A program made the position numbers and the translations under genes. Positions 1 through 32,192 of a DNA stretch of 32,529 nt are shown piece after piece. How positions within the stretch are numbered: position 1 is the stretch's first letter; the number at the start of each line of letters is the position of its first letter. This DNA comes from Klebsormidium nitens (lineage: Eukaryota; Plantae; Klebsormidiophyceae): positions 1-32,529 of the forward strand of contig DF237740.1 of NCBI GenBank assembly GCA_000708835.1, given 5' to 3'. The notes beneath the pieces are model-generated. The model made no database searches. It worked only from the letters and a program-made list of their open reading frames with translations, and had not been told where the DNA came from.

Positions 1-361
1 AGCGATGACCATAAAGGTCTGACTTACTAACGAACCAGCCGCAGCCATCGGCACGGTCCCCCTTAACCTACTGTACTAAACCTTACCCCACGCTTGGTGG
101 CTGGTACCTTAGCGAAGCAAACAAATACGCGAGAAGCACCGCCTCGTTCTCTTACGCCGGCTTAAGCGCGCCTTAGACCCCAAATCCCAACCCCAAACCA
201 ATTGATCGAACGGTCCAAAACTCCGGTTCACCATATATAAACCGAAGGCCTACTAGTAACCAGCATGTCTACAACTTGTTTACAACTCGTCCGCCCGCGA
301 CACGTGGCAGCGGCCGCCCACATCGTTCACACGACGTCCGAATCGCGGCCGCCCCCCGCAC

Positions 362-3300
362 TCAGCAGCGGCTTCGCGGCCCAATGCCGCAGGCGACACG
401 TGACGACGCCGAGGGCGACCTCCCCGAACCGCGGCCGCCCCCCGCGCTCGGCGCAGCCTTCCGCCCGGTGTTGCGCCCCGAGGCCTGCGCCCGGATGCGG
501 AAGTTGGCCTTGAAGCACGCCTGGCGCAGCTTCAGCGTCTCCTCCGCCATGCGGATGGCCGGCCGCCCCGCGATCTGCGCGCGCTCCATCTCGAGGCGCT
601 GCACGGCGTCGCCGAACTGCGCGCGCGCGCAGGGTTTGGGGTTTGGTCGCACTTCATAAGGAACAGGGCGCAATTGCTGGCGGGTGGTAGAGTGAGCCTT
701 CGATCCGAAAGCCTTGAGAAAGGGTGGAGCGAGAGGGACATCAGGATCTGAGAAGCCGTCAGCACGTCAGTCAAGCTGCTGTTCGCAAGAGGAGATCCAG
801 ATTTCAGGACGGTTTAAGATAGACGAGAAAGCCCAGATGCGTAGCATGAACGTAAAGCAAGCTTTCCTTACAGCTTCCAAGACTCGCTCTTCAAAGGATC
901 GTAAAAGTCGACGGTCCAATGACTCCATACCCATTGAGGGATGCGGACTTGAGGTGTCCACGTTATGCGTCGAAGTCCTTACCGAGGCAGCAGGAACGGA
1001 GGAGCTGTCTTTCGGGTCGGCCAACTCTTTGATGTTGTCGATGAGCACCTTGATGCTCTTAATCTTGCGGTGCGGCCAGCGGGGGATGCCGAAGTCCCGG
1101 CACCGCTTCTTCAACACCTGGGAGGGCAGAATTGTGTGGGCTTTAGAAGAAAGCGAAACCTATGTTTTTGAGCGCGGGTTGAGTGGTGTGAATACGGCAA
1201 GTGGGGGCTGCCGAAGTCCCGGCACCGCTTCTTCAACACCTGGGGGGGGCAAACTGGGCGGGCTTTAAAAGGTAGCGAAACCTATGTTTTTGAGCGCGTG
1301 GAGTGGTGTGAATACGGCGAAGTCCCGGCACCGCTTCTTCAACACCTGGGGGGGCCAAATTGGGCGGGCTTTAGAAGGAAGCGAAACCTATGTTTTTGAG
1401 CGCGGGTGGAGTGGTGTGAGTACGGCCAGTGGGGGATGCCGAAGTCCCAACACCGCTTCTTCAACACCTGGGGGGGGCAAATTGGGCGGGCTTTGAAAGG
1501 AAGCGAAACCTATGTGTTTGAGCAAGGGTGGAGTGGTGTGAGTACGGCCAGTGGGGGATACCGAAGTCCCGACACCGCTTCTTCAGCACCTGGGGAAGGA
1601 AGTGTGGGTGAGGCTGAGCAGGGAAGGAGTGGTTCGGGCTTATTCCAGTTTCTGAGCCCGGGTGGAAATCGTGTGGTCAAGCGGGGGATGTCGAAGTCCT
1701 GAAAACACAGTCTTCAACACCTGGGGCGGGGAAAATGGACGAGGTTTAGCAAGAATCTAGAAGTGTGTAGGGTTAAAGCCGATGATAGAGGGGAGAGGTA
1801 GTGCATATGAACATGCCGAAGAGCAGCCCTAGAATCAAGTCACCGCCCTGCAGCCTTTTACTTGCAGACACAAACAGAGACTTCCGCGATCCTCACTTTT
1901 CTCACTTTAATAAAACCTTCGAACCAGAAATTCCTAACCCACTGCAGCGAGTCGATAACGCCCACGGGCTTTGCAACATAACCGGACGCTTTGAGATTAC
2001 GAACCCGAAGCTCCTGAATCTTAGAATATAAGCTTTTATTACTGGTCAACGCCCCGCATCGTGCAAACACAATTAAACTCGTTGCAGTTGTGGCTTCTGA
2101 ATCTACTTGAGTTCCCTCTAACTCTCACAGTAAGGCCGACGCCCAGCAGCTTTGCATTCCAGCCCCTCTCGATACTGAGAGCGTGATGTCCTAAACCCTG
2201 CCTAAACCCCTCACCGTGAGGCCGACGCCCAACAGCCGCGCCGCGCCCACGATCGGCACGTCGAAGTACGTCTGCATCTCCTCCAGAGTGATGCGCTCCA
2301 TGCGCGCGGTCGCGCGCTTCGGGTCGCGCGACATGAAGACGGTCCGTACCGACGCCTGCGTGAGGGAGACCGGGGACTGGTCCCCAGGGGTGTCTCTGGG
2401 GTCGAGGAATTCCGTTCCGGCGCCTTGTTCCGACAGCGGAGAGCGCGGGGAGTCGCGGCAGACACTGGAATCCGTGAGGATTGAGGCCTCGGTCATGAAG
2501 TCGTCATCCGGTTCAGACCGCCGGGGGGAGATGTTGGGGACCGGGGGATCCCCCAAGTGGACGGCGTTCGGTGTGGGCAGGAACCGGGGCTCGAACTCGG
2601 GGGCCATCTGGTTCATCTGGTCGCCGTCAACCGGCAAGGGGGTGATTCTCACCCGGGAAATGGACCCCCCCGGGGGAAGAAAGGACACCCCGGGGCGAAC
2701 CCCCTCCGATGCCTCGGCGTTTATGCACACCCAGAGGCTCGCGGGGGGGTCATTCTCGCGGGTCGCGAGCCCCCCCGCGATCGGCGAGAGGAGGGCAGGG
2801 TCGACTAGAGGGGAATCCCCAAGGGACGGCAGGCTCGTGCTGGGGGGGCCGGAGGCGGGGGCGGAGGACGCCCTCTGGAAGGGCGCGGCGTCTTTCGCCG
2901 GCCGTTCGCTCGGTATGGTGCTCCGGCTCCTCGGCAAGAGGGACCGGTTCCTCTCGGGGACGACGGATGAGGTGTCGTCAGCAAAGACCTCCGGGAGGCC
3001 AGGAGAGCCTGGAATCTCCAACCGCGGGGGTGGGCGGTAAAGCAGGCCCTCCGTTTCCTGGTCGGAGGGATCCCCCCGCTCCTCCTGCTGCTGACGCAGG
3101 TCGTCGTACAAGGAACCGGGGGTGACGTCCGGGGGAATGAAGGCGGGGTACTCCGCTAAAAACGCCAGCTGTTGGTGGAAGTCTGAGTAGCCGGTGACGT
3201 GGGCCCACGGACCCCAGGCGCGGTCGGAGATGAAGCCCGGGATGAACGGGACGAAGTTTGGGGAGGGGAAGTTCTCGGGGTCTGCCCGGGGCTCGCTACC

Positions 3301-6300
3301 GGGCCGTCCTCCGAAGCCTGGAAAGAATTGTTTGATTTGCCAATTCTTTCACTTTTCTTTGTGAGACTTTCCAGCAGAAGTAGCGAAGTGACGGGTCTGT
3401 GATTCGAGTGAGAAAGGCGACAGATTGCGGGAGCATCAAACTACTAAATCAGGCCGGAAAATTGATTGTAAGGAGCTTTGAAGGATACTACCGAGCGTCA
3501 CACTTTTCGCATTCCGGCAGAGAAAACTTAGGGGTCGTCCGAATGTGTTCGTATCGAAATTCTGGTGGGCGGGCAAGCGAGAAAATCCCTTCTCGTTCGT
3601 CAATTTCGTCAATTATGTAAAACTTGAATACCTCAGCAACATAAAGGCAATCGGAAGCTAGGAAGCTGTCCTTGAATCAACCAATGAGCGCCCGTGACTC
3701 GAAAAATGAAGATGTCCGTAGCGATGGCTCGCCAACTTTTTTTCATTAGTTGGGCCTTCTTGCCCTACTTAACCGCATCAGTCATCTTTGCAAAGGTCTC
3801 TCGAAACTCAAACACTCTGACCGCATTGTGAGCGTGTGACCAAACATCACAAGGAGAAGGACGACTCCCTCATCAGTCATTCCCTACGCTTTTGATCGTA
3901 GTACACAGTCTTTTCGGCCCTTGTTGACTATACCGTGCCAAAGTCTGGTTGGCTTCTTGTGTCGCTGCCAAGTAGTCCAAACTCTTAAAGTCAACCATTC
4001 AAGTGGAAAGTCAACCAGTCAACGAGTCACTTGTCACTTGTAAAGCTCTGCTTAAGAAAGCTGAACACTCACCGCCAGGGGGTGGATATAACTGTCCTGC
4101 GGCCCGAGTATTTGGAGAGGTCAACATCGGGTGCGGCCCCTTATCCAATCTTTGAGTCGTCGGGTTAGAGGGGCCGGGTGACTTAGTTGGGGACGGGAAG
4201 TTGGGGTGCAGCGAAACCAGGGGACACGAAGGGATCCCCGGGGACTGGGCGCACGAGAGAAGATCTGCCCACAGAAAAAGCGGGGTTGAATCAACGAGAG
4301 GGCGAGGGGGATACGCAAGGGACGCAAATACAAGGAGAGGACAGTTTAGGTTCGGACCTCAATGTCTGCGAAGTTTTCTGATACATTTCGGCACTCTTCG
4401 ATTGGCGGCCAAGTTTTACAGCACCAACAGAATCCAGAACCGCGATCCGATTCTCCCCATGTCGTCAAACTGGTTACCCATACTCCGACCGCCAGATTTT
4501 GCAGCAACCCAGGAAACCTCAGAACCAGCTAGAGACCGCTTTCACGAAGATTCACAAAGATTCGCACATCATGACTTTGACATCCTTCTCACCAGTAAAC
4601 GAGTCGACATCGTTCCAGAGAGAGCCGTTGGGCGAGTTCGACTCGACCATGCTGCCTTGCCGCGGGCTGGGCAACGAAAGGCTCCGGTGCACGCGGCTTC
4701 CGATGAACGGAACGGAGTTCCGGGCGTCGCTCTCTTGGCTGACGCACGCAGTGGGGGGGGACGGAATGCTGCAAACCGGAACAAATTCTAGAACATAAGC
4801 AAGTGGTCTGCAGAGTTTCGTTCTGACTTCGTCTTTCTTCTGCACCCACCTTTAAAGTGGATAATGTTATAACCTTGACGTGCCAAGCACTGCGGTCTTT
4901 CGGTCGGAAACAAGCGGGAGACGGAATGTGATGAGACCGAGCGGAACGGAAAAGGCCAGATGGATATACCTAAAAGGAAGCAAAGCGGAAGGTCTTCGAG
5001 CTCAGCAGCTACTATTCTTTGTTGAGATCCGCCAGATTAAGATTAGTGAGTCGCTTCGACTTTTGAGGAACAGGGAGAGCTTCAGACCCGCAGGTCTTCG
5101 AAATGACTTGACCTTACAAACTGCCACGTTGACCGTGCAGTGCTGCCTAAGACCGTAGACCACATATCTGCTTTAAGAGTTGATAAGAGGAAACCTGTTG
5201 CTGCTCTGAAATCGTACACCAAGACCAGGACTGAAGTTGAGGTCGAGATCGAGGTTATGTCTGACCATTGGGTTGGCCGAAGCGTCGGCTCGGCGCGGCC
5301 GCCCTCCGCGCCCTTTTTGATGACGGCCTCGACTAATACCAGGTCAGAGTACACGGAGGGGAGGCTGCCCAGAAGCGGGTTCCTGCAAACCGGTACATAA
5401 ACCGAGAGTAAGTCAGACATGAATCTAGTCGTGGAAAAGGTGGCAAGCTAAGACAGAAAGAGGTCTCTGCAAACCCCAAGAGTTGGGTGAGTAAAAGCGG
5501 GTTCCTGCAAACGGGGACCGAAGGCGAAGGTAGGTAAGAAATCAATCTGTGTCAAACGAGTCGAGGAAGAGAGCCACGGTGGACAGAAAGAGGTTTCCTC
5601 AAACGCGAGGGTCGGATTAGTGGCGGTTGAGCAGCTCACAGACGGCTTTGGTGGACGGAGGGACTGAGAGCAAAAAGTTCTTTCAAATAATTAGTGGGCG
5701 GTCGATCCGCGCTTACATGGTAACGCAGTGCAGACTGGTTTGGCTTTTAGTGGCAATCCAAGCGGCGAAAAAACCGTGACGAACCTGCTGGGCGCCAGCA
5801 ATGGGCACATTGACGTGGGTAGGGGGTCATAAACAGCAAAGTCGAGGATGCAGATCCACCCCCCCGCGGCGTGGCCCTTCTTTTGGCTATCCACGAAGCC
5901 CGCCATAGCAGACCAGGAGGGGAGCATCCTGTAAGAAGCGGACACGTGTCAAGAAGGGACGGGTGCAGATTGGGAAGGGGCCACATCCGAGGTAGAGATG
6001 TGGGGCCTCAGGGGGAGCAACTGGGGACAGAATGATATAAATGGGGTTGGAAATCCTGACTGCTGAAAGGAGATACTCCCTTCTTGCACGATCCTGAAGT
6101 CTGGATGATCTGATGAGGTTTCAAACCTTTGCTAATGAAGCTGATGTCGAAAGTCCAGAGCTCGACAGCAATCAACCATCGGACGATGGTTGTCTCCAGA
6201 CTTTTTTCAGAGCGTACTAGGAGCAGCGAGTCACTTGCAAGGCCGAAATTGTGTGACTTCTGTTTGCGGCTAAGCATCAACGCCTCAGCGTTGAACTAAG

Positions 6301-13271: not shown

Positions 13272-16200
13272 TCATCGTTGAGAGCTCGAAGCAATCCGTT
13301 TGATCGCTTTGATGTCCAGCACGCCCGGAGTACTTTCATCCCTCACGGCCTCAACGGCGGCCCGTGCCACGTCTTCCACGTCGACCGGCGGCGCGATCAG
13401 GACGTCCGAACCCGGGATTCTACAGAGAGCGTCCGTCAGCGCGTCCGGCAAAATGGACAAACTTTTTTCTACGGCGGCGCCCACCGGCGTCAGCGGAATG
13501 CTGACGTTGTTCGCCTGGGGGACTCGTCGGGAGCCGTAGATGAAACCCGGCCGCAGAATGACGCCTGCACGGGGGGGGCGGGACGTCAGGCTGACGTGAG
13601 GCGCAAAACCGGGCTTTGGAACGACTGCCCGCACTGCGTCAAAGTCTACTTGAAATTCGAAGGGCTGAACAACGTTTGACAAGCATGCAGATCGTTGCAC
13701 AAGAAATCAAAACCCAAGCCGATCAGCCGTGTTGAACTCACGAGCAAGGCAGCCAACTCCAAAATGTCTCCTCAGTTTCTCTCAGCTCGCAAGTTGAAAT
13801 AAGACAAAGCCGCACGAGCCAGTCGCAAGCTAACAAGCCGCAGAAGGAAGGCGGTTTCTGGGGACAACAACAGACAGATTACCGGGAGAGTTAGAAGACA
13901 CCCGGGGTCAAAGTAAGCGGCCAGGGAGACAAGCAAACCCAAGAGGTTAAGGAATAACCCACCAGAACCCGGGTAGAGCTCCGCGATTCGCGCCTCCGCC
14001 TTCTTCTTGCCCACGAAGTATCCGATGCTGTCCTTTACCCCGGACGGCAGATTGTAATCATGCACGCTGACGAAGATGAAGCGCGGGACGCCTGCCGAGA
14101 AGAAAAGGTGACGTCGGTAGAGCAACAAGGCTGGTGCGTGCTAGGGGCAGGATGGTTGCAAATCGGGAGAGGTGACGTCAGTGCGGCGACAAGTCCGGTG
14201 CGCGCTAGCGCCAAGATGGTCGCTCCAAAGGCTTCGCAAAGTGCGAGATGCGTACGCAAAAGACTGGAATGTGGAAATTCTCGGAGGCGAGGTGTTCGTT
14301 CCAGCGGCAGCCCAAGAGAGTGCGTCAAGTGGGGGATGCTTGAAACGACATTAGTTCAACAATTCCTGAGCGCTGAACAGATTTCGGCAATAAGATAGAC
14401 GCGGCAGGGGGAAGCTCCCAAAGCAGTTTTGGAAAAGAGGACTGAGTCCCCTTGAGCCGAGGCACTTTCTCCATCGGGACAGTACTGAGGTCACCACTTA
14501 CGTCATCACAACCTGTCATCCTCAACCGCGCCAAACTCTCGTTCATACAAGTTGACCTCGACTCAAGGATGATGACGTCATGCTAAGGCTGATCCACTTG
14601 TAGGCGCTAACTACTGCAGCCTCAGCGAACCTGGCGGCGCACAGGGTAGTGTTGAATCCCATAGCCCAGACGGTTCAACAAAGCTGACTTCGGCTGCGAT
14701 TTCGGATACCAACAAGGAATGAAGGGAAGAGACACGAGAGGAAAGAAGGGGACGCTGACGTCACGCTCACCTGCGTTCTTGGCGGCCTCGGCGGCGCGCA
14801 CGGTGGCGTCGCCGCAGATGCGCTCCATCTGCTCGTTGGTGCCGAAGCCGCCGAGGCAGGACATTACGGCGGACGCGCCCGCGAAGTAGCTCTCGAGGTC
14901 CGCGGAAAAGACGTCGGCTGCACGGAACAATTAAATGCTTTGATTGTTCAAGCCCAATGCAATGCAGTGTCTAAGCCCGAGTGCTAGTCTTTGGAAAATT
15001 TGATCAATGAATCCGCCCCAAGTGCGGCATGACGGCAGACGCGCCTTCGAAGTAGCTTTCAAGATCGGCAGAAAACACGTCGGCTGCACAGCAAAACGAA
15101 GCGGATGAGAGCTTTTTTGTTTACACACCCAACGGAATAGTATTTTAGCCCAGCGTGTCTGAGGATTTTGGGTAAACAAACTGACGGCGGACGCGCCCGA
15201 AAAGTGGCTCTCGAGTTCCGCGGAAAAGACAACGACTGCACAGCAAAATAAAGTGTATCAAGGTGCTGCTATACCGAAATGGGGGTGTGTATTTGTACGG
15301 TTTGGCTTGGTAAACCTGCCCCCATGCACAACATTACGGCGGACGCGCCTGCGAAGTAGCTCCCGAGGTCCGCGGAAAAAGACGTCGGCTGCCCAACAAA
15401 CGAAAGTTGAGAGGGCGGTAAATTGGAAGACATATATTTCAAGAATGCAGATTTTAAATGAAACGGAACGATGCATGACAGAACGGCGGCCGCGCCCGCG
15501 CCCGCGAAGAAGCTCTCGAGGTCCGCGGAAGACACGTCGACTGCACAGCAAACGATCGGTCTTAAAAAAAATCTACATTCGGAGAATTTGGCTTTAGGTG
15601 TGCAGGTTTCGGAAAGTAGAAACGGACGATGCACGACGAAGCGGCCGAGGCGCACATGAAGTAGCTCGCGAGGCCCACAGACGTTCGGCTGCGTGGCAGA
15701 TGAGAGCGTATCAGAAAACTGCTACATTTCTAGGTCTTCTGGGTTGGCATGAGCGAACCCGCCTACCGCACGTCATGTCGGCGGATGCGCTGAAATGGTG
15801 ATTCTCGAGATTGAACGGGGATGACCTCGTAGCCGCAAGCGGAATGAGGGGTTTGAGCGTGCTGGGGGCCAAGGGCTTTCGGCTTTCTGTGAAAACTACC
15901 GGTGGTTGGACGGGCCAAGAGGCAACCCCAGACCAGCGGACACGGCGGCAGAAAGGAAAAGTTGTCCACTTAAGAGGGCTTCTATAACGGGCTTTGCGGC
16001 TTCCTAGAGATCGGATTCCAGTATCTGGCGAACGGTCGGAGCGACCCCAAGCGCGGCAGAGAGGGGGCTCGAATATCCAGCGGAACAATCTGCTTTGCGG
16101 GGCTGTTACGTGACCCACTCACCCGTGATCCACTGCGCATTGTAGACCCAGGCTTCGGCCACTGTGGGCCGCCCCGACCTGCGGACGAAGGACGAGAGGT

Positions 16201-20070: not shown

Positions 20071-23000
20071 ATGGCATCAGCGTCGCCCCTGGTTCAGTCC
20101 ACCTGGGCTCGTTTAACACCAGCTCCCGCTCCTGCCTGGCGAGATGGGCTTCAGTCCGGCAGAGTGTCAAGCAGCCCGGAGCCGGAGGCTGTGGCTGTTT
20201 CCAGGGGCGCAAGGATTGGCGTCACATGCGTCAACTCGACACCCTCAACGTCTGGAAGCTCCCTTGACTCGAAGCGGCCTCATCGGGTCAGGCGCTTCTT
20301 GGAGCCTGCTTTGCAGCCAAAGCAGGGAGGCGATCGTCATTTAGAAAGCAGCCCCCGGGTTGTGCGAACGCGCGTTTCTGTCAGGGAGGCTGCGATTGAA
20401 CCCCCGTCTTTGGAGGCCGCCGCGGCAGCTCTAGAAGTTGCCTATCGGGAACCCTCTTTTGGGCTCGACGATGTGTTGGCGCTGAGCGACGAGTTGGAAG
20501 TTGTGGGTCCTCCTCCGGATTGGAGTTTAAGCCTTGAAAACAATGCCCAAAGCCCTGTGATCCTGGCCAGGGGTCGCGGCGGCGTTGCTCTAGATAGCGT
20601 GCGGCAGGGGTTGGACGATGTGTTTGAGATGAGCGGGGATCTGGACATTCTTGGACCGTCGCCGGACGACACGTCAAGCTTTGCGGTGATCGATCAGGGG
20701 GCGGGTGCGGGTCGGGGCCTCCAGTGGCCGCAGATTGCGGAGACTGTTGTTTCAGCTGTTGGAGACTTTGCGGAAGATGTGTTTGATAGCGATCTTGCAT
20801 TAGAAAGGGCTCTGGATCTGGAGTCGCGTGTTGTAGAGACGGAGACGGGAGCGAGGGAAGCATCGGGTGCCAGCTCTAGTTTAGAATCTATGGAAGTTAA
20901 TGGAAGTAGGATAAATACAGGGGTGGAATTGTCGCGGAAAGAAGAGAGTGCTTTGGGGGGCAGTGAAAACGCGGGTGGGCTATCCGGTGAGGGTTTGTGC
21001 ACCCTAACCAGCAACAGTCTGCGAAACTTAGCTACGGCGCCGGTGCTTCGAAAGCTAGCTTCCAAGGCGGTGAGCCTCGTTGCTCCAAAGACGATCAAAG
21101 CTAGAGTCAAGCGGGGGGACAAGAAAGTTGTTCGCCGACGGTTGGGGGGCGCTGAAAGCTCTGTAAATCCACCCCCCATTAGAATCCCTAGGGCCGCAGC
21201 GGTGTCTGCCGATGGGCTGATTGACGCATCAGCATTGAAGGCGATCTACGAGGAGGGTGTCACGAACATTGGGAGTCGAGCTGGGGGGGCGAGTCGGCGG
21301 GGGGCCGATGGCATGTCGTTTGTCAACGAGTGGAACCTGTTGACGGCGGAGGAGGAGAAGAAGCTGGCGCTTGTCATCCAGAGGAGCAAGGTGAGGGTGT
21401 GAGTATTTACTGGGGCGCTGTAGGTTGGAGCTGATCGGGCACATGTTGTGCTTTGAATCATATGGCAGGGTTGATTGCCTGTATTGTCCCCCATCTCTAA
21501 GGGGGGTCATGACACTAGCCTCCCCAGCTTGTCTTCCTATCGGGCCTATCTTTGATCGTTTAGTTGAACATTGCATATATGACATAAAGATCTCTCATGG
21601 ACATCTGTCAATTGTTTGGCTCTGAATTGTCATTTCACTAGGGCATGTCTGTCCTTTGAAGTTTTTTTCATTTTCGCTCATTCCGGGCCAGGCCAAAATT
21701 TCTGGTCAACGGCACTTCTGCCTTACGAGCTACTCAGGGACTTCTGCCTTACAAGCTAGTCAGGGAGAGGTGTACTCAACGAGTAATTCTGTGGCACAGG
21801 CCTTGACGACCCTGAAAGAAGGTTTAGAAGCGAGCACGGGCGTCCCTGCATCAGAGGAGCAGTGGGCCAAGGCAGCGGGCGTGTCAGTGAATGCACTGGG
21901 GCGGCAGATTGCGGCAGGAAAGGAGGCCAGGCAACGGCTAGTGGAGGTAAGATTCCAGGTCGCTTCTTGTTGAAGAAATTTGATTGGCGTGTGGATTCGA
22001 CGTCTCGAGTTGGAGGTGTGCTGGTTGTTTGAAACCCGTGTGGTGTCACTTTGTGGTGTCGGCTCATCTTTCAAGTGGTCCAATTCTACATTGCCCACGT
22101 TTGAAAGGTCTGAGTCGTTCCAGTGGGGATGTTGGTCTTATGAGAAGCAGATTTCGTATCCAAAGCTTTGCTTCCAGTTGTCGTTTCTCCTCCTAGCATC
22201 ATGCTTAGCATCATTCTTTGCGCTTTTATTAAAGCCACAATATGAAGCAATCCGTCAACGGCATAATGCATACTCCTCAACCGTCATATGTACTCTTTGT
22301 CTTCTCCCGAAGTCTTAACGAACCTTCGCTTCGACCCAACCTGACGCTCCTTTTCAAACCTCGTTTTGCAGTGCAACCTGCGCCTAGTCATGTTCGCCGC
22401 AAACAGCATGAAGCACTACCCCAACGCGCTCCCGACCGAGGACCTCTTTCTCGCTGGCATCCAAGGGTTGCTCATCGCCGCAGACCGGTTCGATCCTGCG
22501 CTCGGAAACCGCTTCTCGACGTATGCTCTTCCGGCCGTCCGCTCGTACCTGCACCGTGCGATCCAGCGCTCTGGCGTCCTCATTTGCGCCCCCGTCAAGC
22601 GCACCACGGTGAGACGTTTTGCTGACGTCATTGCTCCCGTTTCTGATGTAAATAGCGTATCTGGCCTGCAGAGTTATTTCGCCGTGGTAGGCCGGTTCCC
22701 ATCTTGGAAGACATTGTCAAGATCTTCGTCTACATTTCTTTCTCTCGCTAACCTGACCGTCCTTTTGCTAACCTGACCGTCCTTTTGCTAACCTGACCGT
22801 TCTCTGGCTGACCTGACCTCTCGCTAACCTGACCAGTCATTTTCTTGCAGGGTTTGGTTAACCTTGACAAGGTGCGCCGGGAGCTCTCCGCCAAGCTCGG
22901 CCGTCTCCCCACACTAGACGAAATTGCCAAGTACAAAAACGTGGGCGTCGATCTGATAAAGGACGTCCTGAAGTGGCACCGTGGAATGGACGTCACCTTC

Positions 23001-26475: not shown

Positions 26476-29400
26476 CTACGGGGCCGTGCCACGAGACCCG
26501 TCCTCCGTCGGCCCTCCACTCTCCGAACGACTTCTCTCGACACCCCCCCGGCCCGTCTCCCTCTCAGCATCCGCTCCAGCGCCAGGGGCTCCTGGCGCCC
26601 CTGCCCGCACCCCCCCATCTCGGAGATTCTCAGACACCCCTCCAGCCGACTCTTTTTCGTCCAGAGCACGTTCCTGGTTTCCTACCGAGGGCGCTTCTTC
26701 CAACGGGGTGGACTCTTCTGCTTCCCTGGGGGCGGGTGGTGATACCGTCTCCGGGCGAAACTCCGGCCCGTGCAAACCAGGAGAAGCCCTTGGACCGTCT
26801 AAGCGAGCAGGCGCCCGTTGCTCGGTTGGCGTGTCAGCAGACCCAACGGAAGGGAGAACCGTTTCCGCCCGCTCGTTCCAGTCTTCCGTCAATTCATCCG
26901 GCATCTGGTCTTCCGAACGTCTCTCAGCCCCTTCTTTTCCGGGAACTGGGTCCCCCTCCCTTTCTTCCTCAACCCGGGACAACGGACCTTCCTCATCAGA
27001 ACGAAAAGACCCGTTCTGAATGTTTCCGATGCCAGCTTCTCCCGCTTTCTGCGTCCAAAGGAGCTCAGCAGACGTTGCACCCCCCCCTTGAGGGGATCCC
27101 CGGAAGTCGGCCGGTGTCAAGAACGGCAAGACGCTGTAAGACTCCGACGGCCCTATCGCACTCGGAGGCTTTTCTGACACACTCGGACCCACAGACGCCG
27201 CTTGCTCCGCACCTGCTGACGACGCCCCGGCGCCGCTGACGCCATCCGCTCCCACCGGCGCAACGCCATGCACGGGCGCTTCTGGGGGCATGCCCTCCGG
27301 AACCGCCGCGACCGCACTCTCCGGTATTGGTTCCCGCTTCTCCTCAGCTCTTGGCCCTTCAAGCGATCCGTGGGCTGCTGACGTGGCGGTTCCTGGTTGG
27401 CCGCCTGCTGACGTGGCAGCTCCAATTTGGCCGCCTGCTGACTTGGCGGGTTCTGGTTGGCCGCTCGCCGACGTGACCCCTTCGAGTTGAGCGCCTGCTG
27501 ACGTCCCCATGCCGAACCCGTCCCTCTCAGAAACTTTTGCCTGCTGGTTCGTACCCGCATCAGCAGTCCATGCGGTAGATTCCGTTCGCGCCCCTTCCCG
27601 CATTTCCGTATCCAAACCCGCGCTTTCTTTCTTGCCAGCAGAGCTTGGTCGGGACCCAGGCGCCGAGGGGGGGCGTCCGTACGGGGTCGGGCTTGCCCCC
27701 CGTTGCGGTCCGCCAAACAGTAGCCCAATTGGCTTATCCTCTGCGTCGTGATCGTCGCCCTCAGAAGGGGTGATCGCAAGGTTTGTTCGACTCCCCACCA
27801 GAGAGATCTTTATCGCTGGGGGCCCATTTGCGGTGACCGGTGTGAACGGGGACGCTAAGCTGAGAGGCGGCCCTGTTTTCAGGACTGGTGCAGGGCTCGC
27901 ACTGGTCTCCGACTTCGCAACCGCCGACGCGGCCCCCAGCAGGGCCTCCGGTTTCGCCCCTGCCGCAGGGAGAATCCCGGGCCCTGTTTTTGCGGCCGTT
28001 GCTGTCCGGGGAACAATTACTTCAGGGGGCTTGGGCTGGCCTCCGCTGGGCTTCTCTTCCTCCCCCACCCAACCCCGGCCGAACTTGACCCCCGGGGGGA
28101 GGATTTTCTGCACTTTGGCGACCACTTTAGCCCACACCGGGTCTGGCAAGTTGGCCGCAAAACGGCAGAGGCTGCGCGCGTACGCGTAGGGGGGGTGCCA
28201 TCCGGTCTGCAATGAGGAAGTAAAGACCAGCCTTAGCATCGGCATGCTTTGGGGAAGTGCGGGAAAAAAGGTAGCTATCTTGTTGTGGGGTTGTAGATAG
28301 CTTGCTACACGGTCTGCATGCAGTGAGCACTTTCTTGAAACGAGAGTGAAGCTTTCGTCTTCAACCAGTGATAAGCGTAAGATGGGTCCACGATAAATAC
28401 AAGCAGGAGAGACTCATTACGCAGTGTACGGACAAACGTTGCACCCGACGTGACGGTGAAAGACCTCTGATTCGACATCCGTTACAATTATCTTACTCCA
28501 GAAATGACTTCAAACGCTCAGTTTCTGGCAGAGCTGCTTCCGTTCCTCAGAGCGTTGGAGCCAGCACAAAAACGTCTTCAGATCCACTCACCGGAACGAG
28601 AACGTGCGACTCCCCCCCCGGAGCGCTCGGCTTCGGCCCGTGGCCCAACATCGGGAGCTCCCGCGCGCGGTAGCTGCTCCGCTTGTACTCTGCCGAGGCG
28701 AGCGGTAGGCGCCCGTCTTTCGGGCCCCAGAACTCCTTAGTCTTGCGGTAGCCTGCAACGGAGCGCGGATGACGTCAGCATCTGGCTTTTATACTTATGC
28801 ATGCCTTTATCTTAGTACCGAAGCTCATTGAGAATCTTTCGAAGAAACGTCATGAGGCATGTTGGGACGACAAAGCTCACGAAGTCCTCGCAAGCAAGGA
28901 GAACCCACCCCCACCAAGCAGCTGGAACGTTCTTCCTTTCCAGCCATGGCTGCTCCGTTCACCTTTATAGAATCAAACAGCTGTGATTCTGAGCCACTTT
29001 CAGGATATCTGATAAGGTGATTCTAGCCGTGAATTACCACAGACATCCCACCTTCCTCCCCGACCAGGCCAACAAACATACAGGCTTCCGGACAGGAACA
29101 AAACAAAGAACCTCTGCCACGCACCTGGCACGTCCTCCCCAGCCTTTACATCCGACGTTGCTGCTCCAAATCATAAACCATAACCAAACAGCCCACGATC
29201 CGGCCGTTCCCTGCAAAGTACACGTACACATTTTCCACAAATCAAACAAATATCCCCCCAACGCACCTGGCACGTCTTCCCCATCGTTCGCGTCCGACCA
29301 CGCCTGCTTCCCATCGTCCCCCCCCTTGCCACCCGCGTACTTGCCCCCCCCCTGCTTGCCCCCAAGCTTCGCCAACTCGTCAATGCTCAGCCCCTTTTGG

Positions 29401-32192
29401 ATCAGCTGGTCTACTCCGGGGATGCTCGCGAGCTTCTGGCCCTTGATGCGGCGGCCCCCCCATCCCGCGGTGGTTTTCTTCTTGGGCTCGGTCGACGGCT
29501 CCTCCTTGAAGCGGGATGCGATCTGGCGCTTACGCTGGCCCGTGCCTGAAAGGGAATAATCCTTTTCGATTCAGTGAATACAAGCCCATGGAATAATACG
29601 CGCTTGTATGAGCAGCCGCACCCACTTCAGGCCTCTGACTAGCGCCACCCATCCCAGTACTTTCTTCTTGATGACAAATGGACCTTTTACTACACCGATC
29701 AGAATGGGAAAATGGATGCAACCCGTCGAGGATTCCCAGAACTTTCTTTCTTCATGTTCAGTGTGCATTTCACTGCACCAATCCGAGTGAAGAAACGGAT
29801 GCAACCCCGTGTGTTGCTCTACAAATCAATCTCGGCGGTTCTGCTTTGATAGCAGGAAATTGGTGCCCGAAAGAATCAGATTGGGCTAGTCCGTTAAGAA
29901 AACACTCTGGTGGAGACAACTGCGACAAAAGCCTTGAGTTTGCCAACTCAGCAACTGTCCCGCTTAAACGATCATAATGAACTAGAAAGGATGAACAACC
30001 GACAACTACGCAAGGAGAATTTCGTAGCTGACTAACGTCCAGAAGATGGCCAAAGAGTTCGATTCAGACGATCCAAAGATCACACCTGCGCACGCAAACA
30101 GAGAAAAGGGCAGCTCACCGAGGGCGCCCCGCGCCGCGTCGATCACCTTCCGAGACGCCTCCTGCATGCTCTTGGCCGTCTTGTAGAAGATGGTATCGGG
30201 GGAGTTGTACTTTTGGGCGTTGTCAAACATCTGCAAGGGGGTAAAAGCGCGCTCTGTCTAAATGTCTGAGCACTCAGGAGCGTCCCAAAAAGTTCTATCT
30301 TCTGCCAAGCGACCGCAACCGGGGGGTGACAGAATCGCCAGTCGAGAGGCTCAAATCTGCTTGAAGGTAGTGACAATGAGCAACCCGAGTCTATGTTGAG
30401 AATGCGCAGCTAGTTAAAAGGCTGGAAGCACGATAACAAACAAATGAAGGAACTGATGGAAAATCGTAGTTGGAAAACGATCGTAGCTTCGTGCCAGCTT
30501 TGTCTTGTTCACAGGCACATAAATGGTGCTCTAGAGCAACAAGTGCAATGACAAGACCGGAGTTCGCCAGCTTGAGCACATCGAAGCCCAGAATTTCAAG
30601 CCGTCCAACTCTTACTGAAGTCCGGCGCACAACGATCAGGTAGTAAGATCGGTGGAAAAGCAGTGGCCAGACCTGCCGCCAAGAGACCGTCACAGATTGC
30701 GGCTTTGACCGACACGAAACCACATAACTACCACAAAATCGAAAAAAGGAAAAACAGGAAAAGAAAGGAAAGCTGGTGAACGAAACAAACACTTGGCAAA
30801 ACCCACCAGCTCGACGTGCGCCTGGAAATCATCCCACGTGAGGTACAGCCCCTTCTTGAGCCGCTTCTTCATCGTCGAGAAGTCCATCGGGTCCTTGATG
30901 ACGTCATAGTAGTCGAGCACGACGTCAGCATCCACCGGCTCCGCAAAGATCTGGTACGTGTCCTTCTTCTGCAGCCGCGCGATGATGTCGTCCATCGCCG
31001 CCGCCGAGGGGGGGGCCTCCTCCTGCTCAGAGTCTTGCCTGGAAGGGGGGGGGGGAGGTGGAGAAACACGGGTCACGCTTAGAAAACTCCGAATTAGTCT
31101 GGTTCAGAAGCTGGTCAAGCGAGTGGTTCAGAAATTGGCCAAGCTGATCGTTCAGAAGTTGGTCAAGCAGATAGTTTCGTATCAGAGTGTTGACAGCAGC
31201 CCTACTGCCACGTCCACTACCCTTTTGGGGCACCGCTCAGAGGACTCACATGCGCTCAGATCCCCAGCGGGCGCTTGCTTTACTATCAGCAACGCGCAGA
31301 TGATATTACCACCAGACCTCACATTTTCCATCCATGACAAGCGATTTAAATCCACCGCCAGATTTATATCTGTCGGTACCATGACTTGCAGAATCATCAT
31401 CTCAGAGGCAACCGTTTCACATGCCCATGCGTGCGGCAGAAGATGAGCGGAACACACTGCCACATGCGCCCGTGTTCTCTAAAGCTGCGCCACCTACCCT
31501 TGCTTCTCCTCGCTCAATCTGCTCCCGTCCACCTTCAAGCGCCCCTCCGCCGCCAGTCCCACCTTCATCTTCCGGCCGGCTGTCTCCAGCTTCCCCGTCA
31601 AACCCACCGACTTCATCTTGTTTGCCGAAGCTTTCAGTGGTGCAGCCTTCTCCCCCTGTCCAGCGCCATCCCCGCTTGCATTCAAACTCTTCATTTTTGC
31701 GTCCGTCTTCTTTGCACTCCCGTCCAGACTTTGTCCTGCTTTTCCGCTTGCATCCTGCTTCTGTCCATTCCCGTCCGTTCTGACTCCGCCGCTAGTTCCC
31801 CCCTCTCCGTGCTTGGCTCCAAACTGATCGCCCGCCCCATTGCTGCCAGGCTTAGCGTCCCCCCCGCCTGTCTTCTCCCGCTTCTCCTTACTCCGCTTTT
31901 TCTTCTTGGGGGGCCCCTCTCCGGTGTGATCTCCATCCCTCGACCTCTTCTTATCTTTCTTGCTGCGTTCCCCATCCTTGTGACTCCTCTCCCCATCCTT
32001 GTGACTCTTCTCTCCGTTCTTGTGACTCTTGTCTCCATGCTTCTCATCCCGCCTCTTCTTGTCCTTCTTATGTTCCCCGGACTTGTGCTTTTTGGGGGGC
32101 CGATCCGAGCCCTGCTTTGCAAGTGCTGCATCCTCCGGCCGGATCTTTTTAGGGAGACGAACCAGGATGGGGACAGCTTCGTCCCCAGCCAT
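26476..32192 (-). CDS. Plant-type bromodomain-containing protein (At1g20670-like architecture)
   Basis: Exons 32192-31498, 31038-30807, 30230-30119, 29545-29267, 28752-28593/28592, 28206-26476 or beyond; phases compatible with the fifth exon ending at 28592. Bromodomain LQKKDTYQIFAEPVDADVVLDYYDVIKDPMDFSTMKKRL..YLTWDDFQAHVEL|MFDNAQKYNSPDTIFYKTA, plus the conserved plant motif YARSLCRFAANL..VWAKV..KVQKILPPGVKFGRGWVGE. The 3' end is uncertain because of the gap. Confidence 0.87.
27376..27475 (-). repeat. Coding 30-bp tandem repeat (~3.3 copies; TSAGGQPxxA-like peptide)
   Basis: tgctgacgtggcggttcctggttggccgcc-like units start at 27376, 27406 and 27436. Confidence 0.85.
31101..31172. repeat. Intronic 24-bp tandem repeat x3 upstream of the bromodomain exon 2 acceptor
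   Basis: ggttcagaagctggtcaagcgagt / ggttcagaaattggccaagctgat / cgttcagaagttggtcaagcagat. Confidence 0.85.
31971..32033 (-). repeat. Coding 21-bp tandem repeat x3 (KSHKxGE)
   Basis: cccatccttgtgactcctctc-like units encode KSHKNGE-KSHKDGE-RSHKDGE. Confidence 0.85.

What the first reader, a model, noticed from the sequence alone, without database searches (positions are those of the whole stretch)
1081..1730. Five decoy copies of the acceptor and first half of the RWP-RK motif exon
Seen: upstream (in transcript direction) of the true exon are five copies of ...cag|gtgttgaagaagcggtgccgggacttcggcatcccc, spaced 122, 106, 122, 122 and 131 nt. They translate as VLKKRCRDFGSPHLPY, VLKKRCRDFAVF, VLKKRCWDFGIPHWPY, VLKKRCRDFGIPHWPY and a more degraded distal copy. 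Every copy keeps its AG. The two I followed to the end (1239, 1345) reach a stop within 45 codons. Inference: the spliceosome must skip five near-identical acceptors. Using one would cut the protein in mid DNA-binding domain (RWPHRK replaced), giving an inactive, dominant-negative or NMD isoform.
Basis: partly seen in the sequence, partly recalled or inferred. Interest (0 to 1): 0.8.

Follow-up and report, generated by a model that had tools for sequence, protein, structure and literature searches.

The report
Decoy splice-acceptor array in RWP-RK intron
One intron of an alga's RWP-RK regulator gene holds five tandem copies of its own 3' splice junction; the assembled mRNA skips all of them, and similar arrays in other genes and related algae point to a habit of this lineage, not a switch built for this gene.

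Summary
A 122-nt tandem array lies at 1073-1730 on the minus strand. Each unit holds about 74 nt of intron tail, a CAG acceptor and the first ~48 nt of the RWP-RK exon.

Spliced RNA contigs from four studies all join 2215 to 1117. No assembled contig uses a decoy. Using any decoy would give a stop codon after 26-42 codons.

The regulatory reading is not supported:
- This window alone holds four more splice-junction duplications, in this and other genes.
- A close relative has one decoy at the same junction, with the same unit boundaries.
- Two more distant relatives have none there, but carry 3-5 decoy acceptors in the next intron of the same gene.

In the older copies the exon part and acceptor are better preserved than the spacers. 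This suggests the copies evolve together with the parent exon.

Best reading: serial DNA-level tandem duplication across a splice junction. It is tolerated because the outermost sites are still used and mis-spliced RNA would carry early stops.

The scan noted this habit before on other DNA of this genome (for example the E2F ladder). New here are the RNA evidence and the comparison between species. Rare decoy use cannot be excluded from contigs.

The parts
2215..3317 (-). Upstream exon of the RWP-RK gene. It ends ...GVGLT and encodes the first half of the RWP-RK domain. The donor GT lies at 2214-2213.
   Evidence: RNA contig pieces cover 2212-3316 in four runs, with joints 1114>2212 (cut +3) and 3316>4072 (cut +1). 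The frame is open.
1118..2214 (-). Phase-0 intron of 1097 nt that holds the array. It is removed whole in the assembled mRNA.
   Evidence: A joint that skips 1097 nt with GT..AG ends is present in X1-X4. The intron position is conserved in L001, L002 and L003.
983..1117 (-). True exon that starts VLKKRCRDFGIPRWPHRK, the second half of the RWP-RK domain.
   Evidence: Pfam PF02042, E = 2.3e-10. RNA contig pieces cover 983-1114.
1073..1732 (-). Tandem array with a 122-nt unit: about 74 nt of intron tail with a CTAAA-like branch motif and a C-rich tract, then CAG, then the first ~48 nt of the exon.
1192..1241 (-). Decoy u1: AG at 1241-1240, exon-start copy 1239-1192.
   Evidence: 93% identical to the true exon start. 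A stop follows after 42 codons if it is used.
1314..1347 (-). Decoy u2: AG at 1347-1346. The exon-start copy carries a 16-nt internal deletion, which shortens the unit to 106 nt.
   Evidence: A stop follows after 26 codons.
1420..1469 (-). Decoy u3: AG at 1469-1468, exon-start copy 1467-1420.
   Evidence: A stop follows after 42 codons.
1542..1591 (-). Decoy u4: AG at 1591-1590. The exon part is 91% like the true exon, but its intron tail is only 42-64% like the younger tails.
   Evidence: It lies inside the RNA-run contig 1487-1732.
1676..1722 (-). Decoy u5: the oldest and most diverged copy. AG at 1722-1721; the exon part is 78% like the true exon.
   Evidence: It lies inside the RNA-run contig 1487-1732.
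2115..2150 (-). Decoy donor in the same intron: a copy of the last 22 nt of the upstream exon plus GTGAG, 86 nt downstream of the true donor.
   Evidence: the repeat finder families D5 and D14, 81% identity. RNA uses only the upstream true donor.

Best explanation
The array is a junction minisatellite. A DNA segment of about 122 nt straddling the 3' splice junction (intron tail, AG and first 48 nt of the exon) was duplicated in tandem. It was then amplified by further tandem duplication or unequal exchange, including one two-unit step.

Each extra copy sits upstream of the true junction, so it becomes part of the intron. The intron grew from roughly 370-420 nt to 1097 nt.

The duplication is tolerated because splicing still joins the outermost sites, the true donor 2215 and the most downstream acceptor 1117, which restores the original mRNA. 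I infer that the true acceptor wins for two reasons. Only it is followed by the rest of the exon and by a donor 135 nt away (exon definition). Any transcript that uses a decoy carries a stop 26-42 codons in and should be removed by nonsense-mediated decay.

The copies are partly homogenised with the selected parent exon (concerted evolution). This keeps their exon part and acceptor recognisable while the spacers decay.

The structure is one case of a general habit of this algal lineage. It is not a device specific to the RWP-RK gene.

Shown: the structure, the splicing outcome in assembled RNA, the recurrence at other junctions and the differences between species. Inferred: the duplication mechanism, exon definition, decay of mis-spliced RNA, and gene conversion.
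For: - The array and unit anatomy are documented.
- All four RNA runs join 2215|1117 with GT..AG ends, and no contig shows a joint to a copy.
- Every copy would give a premature stop.
- The same intron has a decoy donor. The window also has a second five-copy acceptor array (14854-15700, period 152), a one-copy acceptor duplicate (5504 decoy against 5382 true, spacing 122, with RNA using the downstream one) and a donor duplicate at 29119/29261.
- In orthologues, L001 has one decoy with period 121 and the same -74/+48 boundaries. L002 and L003 have a clean intron here but 3-5 decoy acceptors in the next intron. L003 has one extra copy there, 97% identical to the true junction, next to the true exon.
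- In the older copies the exon part is better kept than the spacer. For u4 the exon part is 91% against 42-64% for the tail. In array 2 the core from about -20 to +50 is kept while the spacers are at random level.
- The intron upstream of the repeats is saturated between the window and L001 (58% identity), yet copies within each genome are 85-93% alike.
- No Rfam family matches the region.
Against: - Only assembled contigs could be laid, so rare or NMD-cleared use of decoys is invisible.
- Junction-spanning duplications outnumber purely intronic ones in this window (5 loci against 1). My rough random expectation was about 0.7:1, so a junction-directed process is not excluded. The count is small and detection is biased towards copies that are refreshed from a conserved exon.
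- All 10 decoys of the two arrays keep their AG. From their divergence I estimate a chance of roughly 0.03 for this, which hints at some constraint.
- Cis-competition work in mammals, as I recall it, would predict substantial use of fully equipped upstream acceptors. Why they are bypassed is inferred, not shown.
Confidence: 0.68

Rival explanations
1. A junction-directed copying process makes the arrays. Breaks or template switches tied to transcription or splicing at 3' splice sites (for example at the pyrimidine/purine tract or at R-loops) are repaired with local templated synthesis. Junctions would then be copied preferentially, not merely tolerated.
For: - In this window 5 of 7 tandem duplications with periods of 80-170 nt span a splice junction, and the multi-copy arrays are all on the acceptor side.
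- The same holds in L001-L003.
- About two dozen first-stage notes on this genome describe the same thing. These are leads only.
- Periods near 121-122 recur at three junctions.
Against: - The junction sits at variable places within the unit. The exon part ranges from about 11 to 70 nt, as expected if random duplications merely happen to include a junction.
- Donor-side, purely intronic and terminal-exon duplications also occur.
- The sample is small and detection is biased.
- The intron part of the unit (74 nt) extends well beyond the likely branch motif at about -30. This argues against copying from a lariat intermediate.
Confidence: 0.18
2. The decoys are alternative acceptors that are actually used. 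They divert part of the pre-mRNA into truncated or NMD-targeted isoforms and so tune the dose of this RWP-RK factor, perhaps in response to nitrogen or development.
For: - Each decoy has a branch-like motif, a C-rich tract and CAG, and would give a stop codon.
- All decoys keep the AG.
- A low-depth contig, 3.7 against 29.8 for the mRNA, covers 1487-1732 in X1 and X2. The unique part of the intron upstream has no contig. This is unexplained.
Against: - No contig in four runs joins the donor to a decoy.
- The 1487-1732 contig is colinear with the genome across the u5 acceptor, so it is not spliced there.
- The decoy coding parts carry non-synonymous changes and a 16-nt deletion.
- Orthologues have 1 or 0 copies here and arrays in a different intron.
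- Unrelated genes carry the same structure.
Confidence: 0.1
3. The decoys act as recursive (ratchet) splice sites. The exon starts with GT, so each copy reads CAG|GTGTTG. Splicing to a decoy regenerates a donor-like site, and a second splice to the next acceptor gives the normal mRNA. Decoy use would then be harmless.
For: - The sequence context cag|GTGTTG is present in the copies (u4 has GTGCTG).
- A weak donor, GTTCGT, is used elsewhere in this gene.
- Dual-specific AG|GT sites are described in other systems (PMC10809524, title and abstract seen).
Against: - GTGTTG lacks the +4 A and +5 G found in five of the six donors of this gene.
- The other arrays (array 2, the 5382/5504 duplicate, and the arrays of L002 and L003) have exons that do not start with GT. 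Recursion therefore cannot be the general reason such arrays are tolerated.
Confidence: 0.03
4. The array is an assembly artefact, or a transposon or snoRNA cluster, and not a duplicated junction.
For: Tandem repeats are sometimes mis-assembled.
Against: - The units differ by 8-40% and by a 16-nt deletion, unlike a collapse or expansion artefact.
- Independent RNA-run contigs match 1487-1732 exactly.
- The orthologous locus in another assembly has a copy with the same boundaries.
- No Rfam match was found.
- There are no dispersed copies in the window.
Confidence: 0.01

Closest known systems
Human F7 intron 7 minisatellite (37-bp VNTR whose first unit spans the exon 7 donor; PMC1557585)
   Same: A tandem array overlaps an authentic splice junction, so the intron carries several near-identical pseudo-sites. 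These pseudo-sites are competent but silent, and the outermost (authentic) site is chosen.
   Different: F7 is a donor-side array with 37-bp units in one human gene. Here the array is on the acceptor side, with 122-nt units that each carry a branch-like motif, a pyrimidine tract and an AG. The same intron also has a donor copy. Comparable arrays recur in many genes of the lineage.
Intron gain or multiplication by tandem genomic duplication (Rogers 1989 model; potato RdRp case PMC4974935; Gao and Lynch 2009 as cited there)
   Same: A tandem duplication inside a gene includes splice signals. Choice of the outer sites leaves the mRNA unchanged and turns duplicated exon sequence into intron.
   Different: No new intron is created here. 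The intron is old and is shared with relatives that lack the array. The duplication only lengthens it, and it has been repeated up to five times.
Unproductive alternative 3' splice sites coupled to nonsense-mediated decay
   Same: Upstream acceptors would introduce a premature stop if used.
   Different: No use is seen in assembled RNA. The sites are not conserved in number or place between orthologues.
Recursive or dual-specific AG|GT splice sites (PMC10809524)
   Same: The copies read CAG|GT.
   Different: The regenerated donor would be weak. Other arrays of the same kind lack the GT.

Membership tests
Splice-junction minisatellite (F7 IVS7 type) | Head-to-tail tandem units | tested here: met
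   TRF finds period 122, 4.4 copies, score 750. The units align.
Splice-junction minisatellite (F7 IVS7 type) | One end unit overlaps the authentic junction, so every unit carries a pseudo splice site | tested here: met
   The array runs into the true exon to about 1073. All five copies keep CAG|G.
Splice-junction minisatellite (F7 IVS7 type) | The authentic outermost site is used and the pseudo-sites are silent in mRNA | tested here: met
   The joint 2215|1117 is present in four runs and no joint to a copy is seen. This rests on contigs only, so rare use is not excluded.
Splice-junction minisatellite (F7 IVS7 type) | Copy number varies between individuals or strains | not testable with these tools
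   The four runs are identical to the window where they cover it, and they do not span the array. Between species the copy number differs: 5, 1 and 0.
[quoted passage not shown] | A new intron appears where relatives have none | tested here: not met
   The intron is present at the same phase-0 position in L001, L002 and L003.
[quoted passage not shown] | The duplicated segment supplies splice signals and the mRNA is unchanged | tested here: met
Regulated unproductive splicing (alternative 3' site plus NMD) | The alternative site is used in RNA | tested here: inconclusive
   No use is seen in contigs of four runs. Raw reads were not available.
Regulated unproductive splicing (alternative 3' site plus NMD) | The alternative site is conserved in orthologues | tested here: not met
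   There are 5, 1 and 0 copies at this intron, and arrays in another intron of L002 and L003.
Transposon or introner-like insertion | Dispersed copies, terminal repeats and target-site duplication | tested here: not met
   The copies are only local and contain the host exon start.
RWP-RK domain gene | Match to Pfam PF02042 above the curated cut-off | tested here: met
   Exon 1117-983 scores 40.6 bits against a cut-off of 29.3, over model positions 28-49. The first half of the domain is encoded before the intron.

The most novel reading that the evidence does not exclude
This algal lineage has a junction-directed process that keeps spawning complete 3' splice sites (branch motif, tract, AG and exon start) inside introns. 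The arrays persist for long periods by evolving in concert with the parent exon because they do something in splicing. They could act as loading pads or kinetic buffers for the spliceosome, or as a general NMD-coupled throttle. Introns would then grow mainly by copying their own acceptor.
Probability: 0.15. Interest if true: 0.85.

Novelty: new variant of a known kind. Interest (0 to 1): 0.55.

Why it matters
Natural arrays of near-identical, fully equipped acceptors are a ready-made competition experiment for 3' splice-site choice. They are the acceptor-side counterpart of the F7 donor model, available in many genes of one organism.

They also show a concrete route by which introns lengthen: copying their own junction. 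The series of 0, 1 and 5 copies across relatives gives a time course for that growth.

For the RWP-RK gene itself, the practical message is that the array is most likely neutral baggage. Gene predictors can easily pick a wrong acceptor here.

Tried and rejected
- **Rfam** on 900-2400, both strands, at E up to 1 gave no match. An intronic snoRNA or other known RNA cluster is therefore not supported.
- **Transposon reading** is rejected because the copies are only local.
- **Copying from a lariat intermediate** (the unit's left edge at the branch point) does not fit. The unit's intron part is 74 nt, while the conserved CTAAA-like motif lies near -30.
- **Recursive splicing as a general explanation** fails because the other arrays' exons do not start with GT.
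- **Orthology of single decoys between the window and L001** could not be resolved from sequence identity, because the introns are saturated (58%). Only the shared unit boundaries and period argue for common origin.
One search failed on syntax, and Gao and Lynch 2009 is not held.
- **The global-alignment shuffle baseline** was uninformative. I replaced it with the analyses.
- Exons were searched one by one, by reference. This limited the homology search to three hits.

Full report
**Observation**

On the minus strand, the window carries an RWP-RK gene. The sequence shows the upstream exon ending ...GVGLT and followed by GTGAGG. About 1.1 kb downstream lies CAG followed by the exon VLKKRCRDFGIPRWPHRK.... 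This exon matches Pfam RWP-RK over model positions 28-49 (E = 2.3e-10).

Between the two exons, Tandem Repeats Finder reports an array at 1073-1595 with period 122, 4.4 copies, 85% matches and score 750. It also reports a two-unit period of 228 at 91%. The repeat finder adds a diverged distal copy.

The copies of the exon start lie at 1239, 1345, 1467, 1589 and 1720. Each unit holds about 74 nt of intron tail (with a CTAAA-like motif near -30 and a C-rich tract), then CAG, then the first ~48 nt of the exon. One unit (u2) is 16 nt shorter because of a deletion.

All five copies keep the AG. Read-through from each meets a stop after 42, 26, 42, 42 and 26 codons.

**RNA evidence**

The run search returned no run on record as RNA. 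However, the contigs of the four runs I laid come from four studies under two coded organism labels, and they are spliced at six GT..AG introns of this gene. They are therefore RNA-derived.

- All four runs join 2215 to 1117 and skip the whole 1097-nt intron with its five decoy acceptors.
- No contig joins the donor to a copy.
- The RNA-supported exons on the minus strand are 5928-5785, 5382-5266, 4768-4593, 4264-4073, 3317-2215, 1117-983 and 616 downward. All are in one open frame.
- In the two deepest runs a 246-nt contig of low depth (3.7 against 29.8) matches 1487-1732 exactly. It is colinear with the genome across the u5 acceptor, so it is unspliced intron RNA. It also independently confirms part of the array.
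- Contigs drop rare isoforms, so minor or NMD-cleared use of decoys is not excluded.

**The structure is not special to this gene**

The same intron has a decoy donor: the last 22 nt of the upstream exon plus GTGAG, repeated 86 nt downstream of the true donor (2115-2150 against 2201-2236).

Other junction duplications in the window:
- Another intron of the same gene has a one-copy acceptor duplicate (decoy at 5504, true acceptor at 5382, spacing 122). RNA uses the downstream one.
- A second gene has five decoy acceptors with exon starts at 14854-15700, period 152.
- A third gene has a duplicated donor at 29119/29261. That gene model is inferred from the open frame only.

Only one duplication of comparable period is purely intronic (29665/29748), and one lies in the terminal exon (338/424). 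In every junction case the site taken as authentic is the outermost one. RNA shows this for the three cases in the RWP-RK gene. For the other two it is inferred from the open reading frame.

First-stage notes on other pieces of this genome describe the same habit. One follow-up, the E2F ladder, reached the same reading without RNA data. I treat these notes as leads, not evidence.

**Relatives**

I searched the long upstream exon by reference, on its own, and did not search the joined model. The search found three proteins, and I fetched their contigs.

- **L001** (72% amino-acid identity; the second exon is 90% identical in DNA). The same phase-0 intron is about 419 nt and has exactly one decoy acceptor. 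The spacing is 121 nt and the homology runs from about -74 to +48. These are the same unit boundaries as in the window, although the last ~20 nt of its exon part are scrambled.
- **L002 and L003** (about 40% identity; two metagenome contigs from related organisms). This intron is about 367 nt in L002 and about 330 nt in L003, and it is clean. The next intron of the same gene, before the last exon (IG.AIQRLE...), carries three to five decoy copies of that exon's acceptor and start, with periods of 130-140. L003 has an extra copy next to the true exon, 97% identical to the true junction, that L002 lacks.

The habit is therefore shared by the lineage. Arrays arise at different junctions and turn over between close relatives.

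**Evolutionary signal**

The intron upstream of the repeats is saturated between the window and L001 (58% identity in a global alignment). Yet within each genome the copies are 85-93% like the true junction. Together with the shared boundaries, this suggests one old duplication whose copies evolve in concert. The alternative is a recurrent hotspot, and I cannot separate the two.

In the older copies the exon part is better kept than the rest:
- For u4 the exon part is 91% like the true exon, against 42-64% for the tail. For u5 the figures are 78% against 61-65%.
- In array 2 only about -20 to +50 around the acceptor is conserved among copies, while the spacers are at random level.

Diagnostic sites show chimeric units. 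Copies u1, u3 and u4 share a decoy-specific G-to-A change near +38 (u2 has lost that position), and u1-u4 share a decoy-specific C-to-T change near +46. Copies u1 and u2 share with the true exon a derived synonymous C at +18. This mix is what unequal exchange or gene conversion with the selected exon would produce.

The decoy coding parts carry non-synonymous changes and a frame-breaking deletion. They are therefore not under coding constraint.

**Mechanism**

I conclude that a DNA-level tandem duplication across the 3' junction was later amplified and turned exon-start copies into intron. It survives because the outermost sites are still paired.

My inference for why the true acceptor is chosen has two parts:
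- Only the true acceptor is followed by the rest of the exon and by a donor 135 nt away. Apart from the 1103-nt exon 3317-2215, the RNA-supported internal exons are short (117-192 nt), and the introns are 328-1097 nt, which fits exon definition.
- Any decoy-using transcript has an early stop upstream of the last exon junction and would be a target for nonsense-mediated decay.

Neither point was tested.

**Rivals**

- A junction-directed copying process is not excluded. In this window 5 of 7 duplications with periods of 80-170 nt span a junction, against my rough expectation of about 40%. However, the numbers are small, detection favours copies refreshed from a conserved exon, and the junction sits at variable places within the unit.
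- A gene-specific regulatory role has no support.
- Recursive splicing could apply only here, because only this exon starts with GT.
- An artefact, transposon or snoRNA cluster is rejected.

**Comparison with known cases**

The closest described case is the human F7 intron 7 minisatellite. Its first unit spans the exon 7 donor, and its pseudo-donors are functional but silent (PMC1557585).

[quoted passage not shown] Here, however, the intron is old and is only lengthened.

I found no paper describing acceptor-side arrays as a recurrent feature of an algal genome. The library is incomplete. What I can say from the window is that it encodes a sigma-70-like (probably plastid-type) factor, judged by eye from motifs in the translated open frames and not scanned against any family library, and an RWP-RK gene. 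This fits a green-lineage alga.

**Verdict**

- The regulatory reading is unsupported.
- The array is one well-documented case of a lineage-wide splice-junction duplication habit. It now has RNA evidence that the copies are bypassed, and comparative evidence that such arrays are born, grow and are homogenised.

Noticed in passing
window 14854-15700 (minus-strand gene): A second array has five decoy copies of an acceptor plus the first ~65 nt of the exon, with a period of 152-153 (166 for the first step). Only about -20 to +50 around the acceptor is conserved among copies. The spacers keep their length but not their sequence.
   Followed up: partly
window 5373-5548 (minus strand): An upstream exon of the same RWP-RK gene has a one-copy acceptor duplicate (decoy start 5504, true start 5382, spacing 122). 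RNA contigs use the downstream, true one.
   Followed up: yes
window 29119-29298 (minus strand): A donor junction is duplicated (exon end plus GTGCGT) 142 nt inside the following intron of another gene. The gene model is inferred from the open frame only.
   Followed up: partly
window 1487-1732: In runs X1 and X2 a 246-nt contig of depth 3.7 covers decoys u5 and u4, while the unique part of the same intron (1733-2211) has no contig. It may be intron retention, a stable intron fragment or a separate transcript. This is unexplained.
   Followed up: no
window 338-461 and L001 3324-3466: An 86-nt tandem duplication at the end of the coding region and the start of the 3' UTR of the RWP-RK gene is shared by the window and the relative L001. 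Such duplications can therefore predate the split of the two lineages.
   Followed up: partly
L002 7241-8093 and L003 6995-7875: In two more distant relatives the last intron of the orthologous gene carries 3-5 decoy copies of the last exon's acceptor and start. L003 has an extra copy, 97% identical to the true junction, next to the true exon.
   Followed up: yes
window 617-982: The last intron of the RWP-RK gene is covered by low-depth unspliced contigs in all four runs (for example 588-1012 at depth 5.9 against 29.8). This points to partial intron retention or pre-mRNA.
   Followed up: no
window 20071-22776 (+) and 30690-31076 (-): A sigma-70-type factor gene, probably plastid-type (motifs of regions 2 and following), and a bromodomain exon are present. 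Both were read by eye from the translated open frames and were not scanned against any family library. The palindrome TGACGTCA recurs in the window (for example near 14570, 14755 and 28775), as another note on this genome reports.
   Followed up: no
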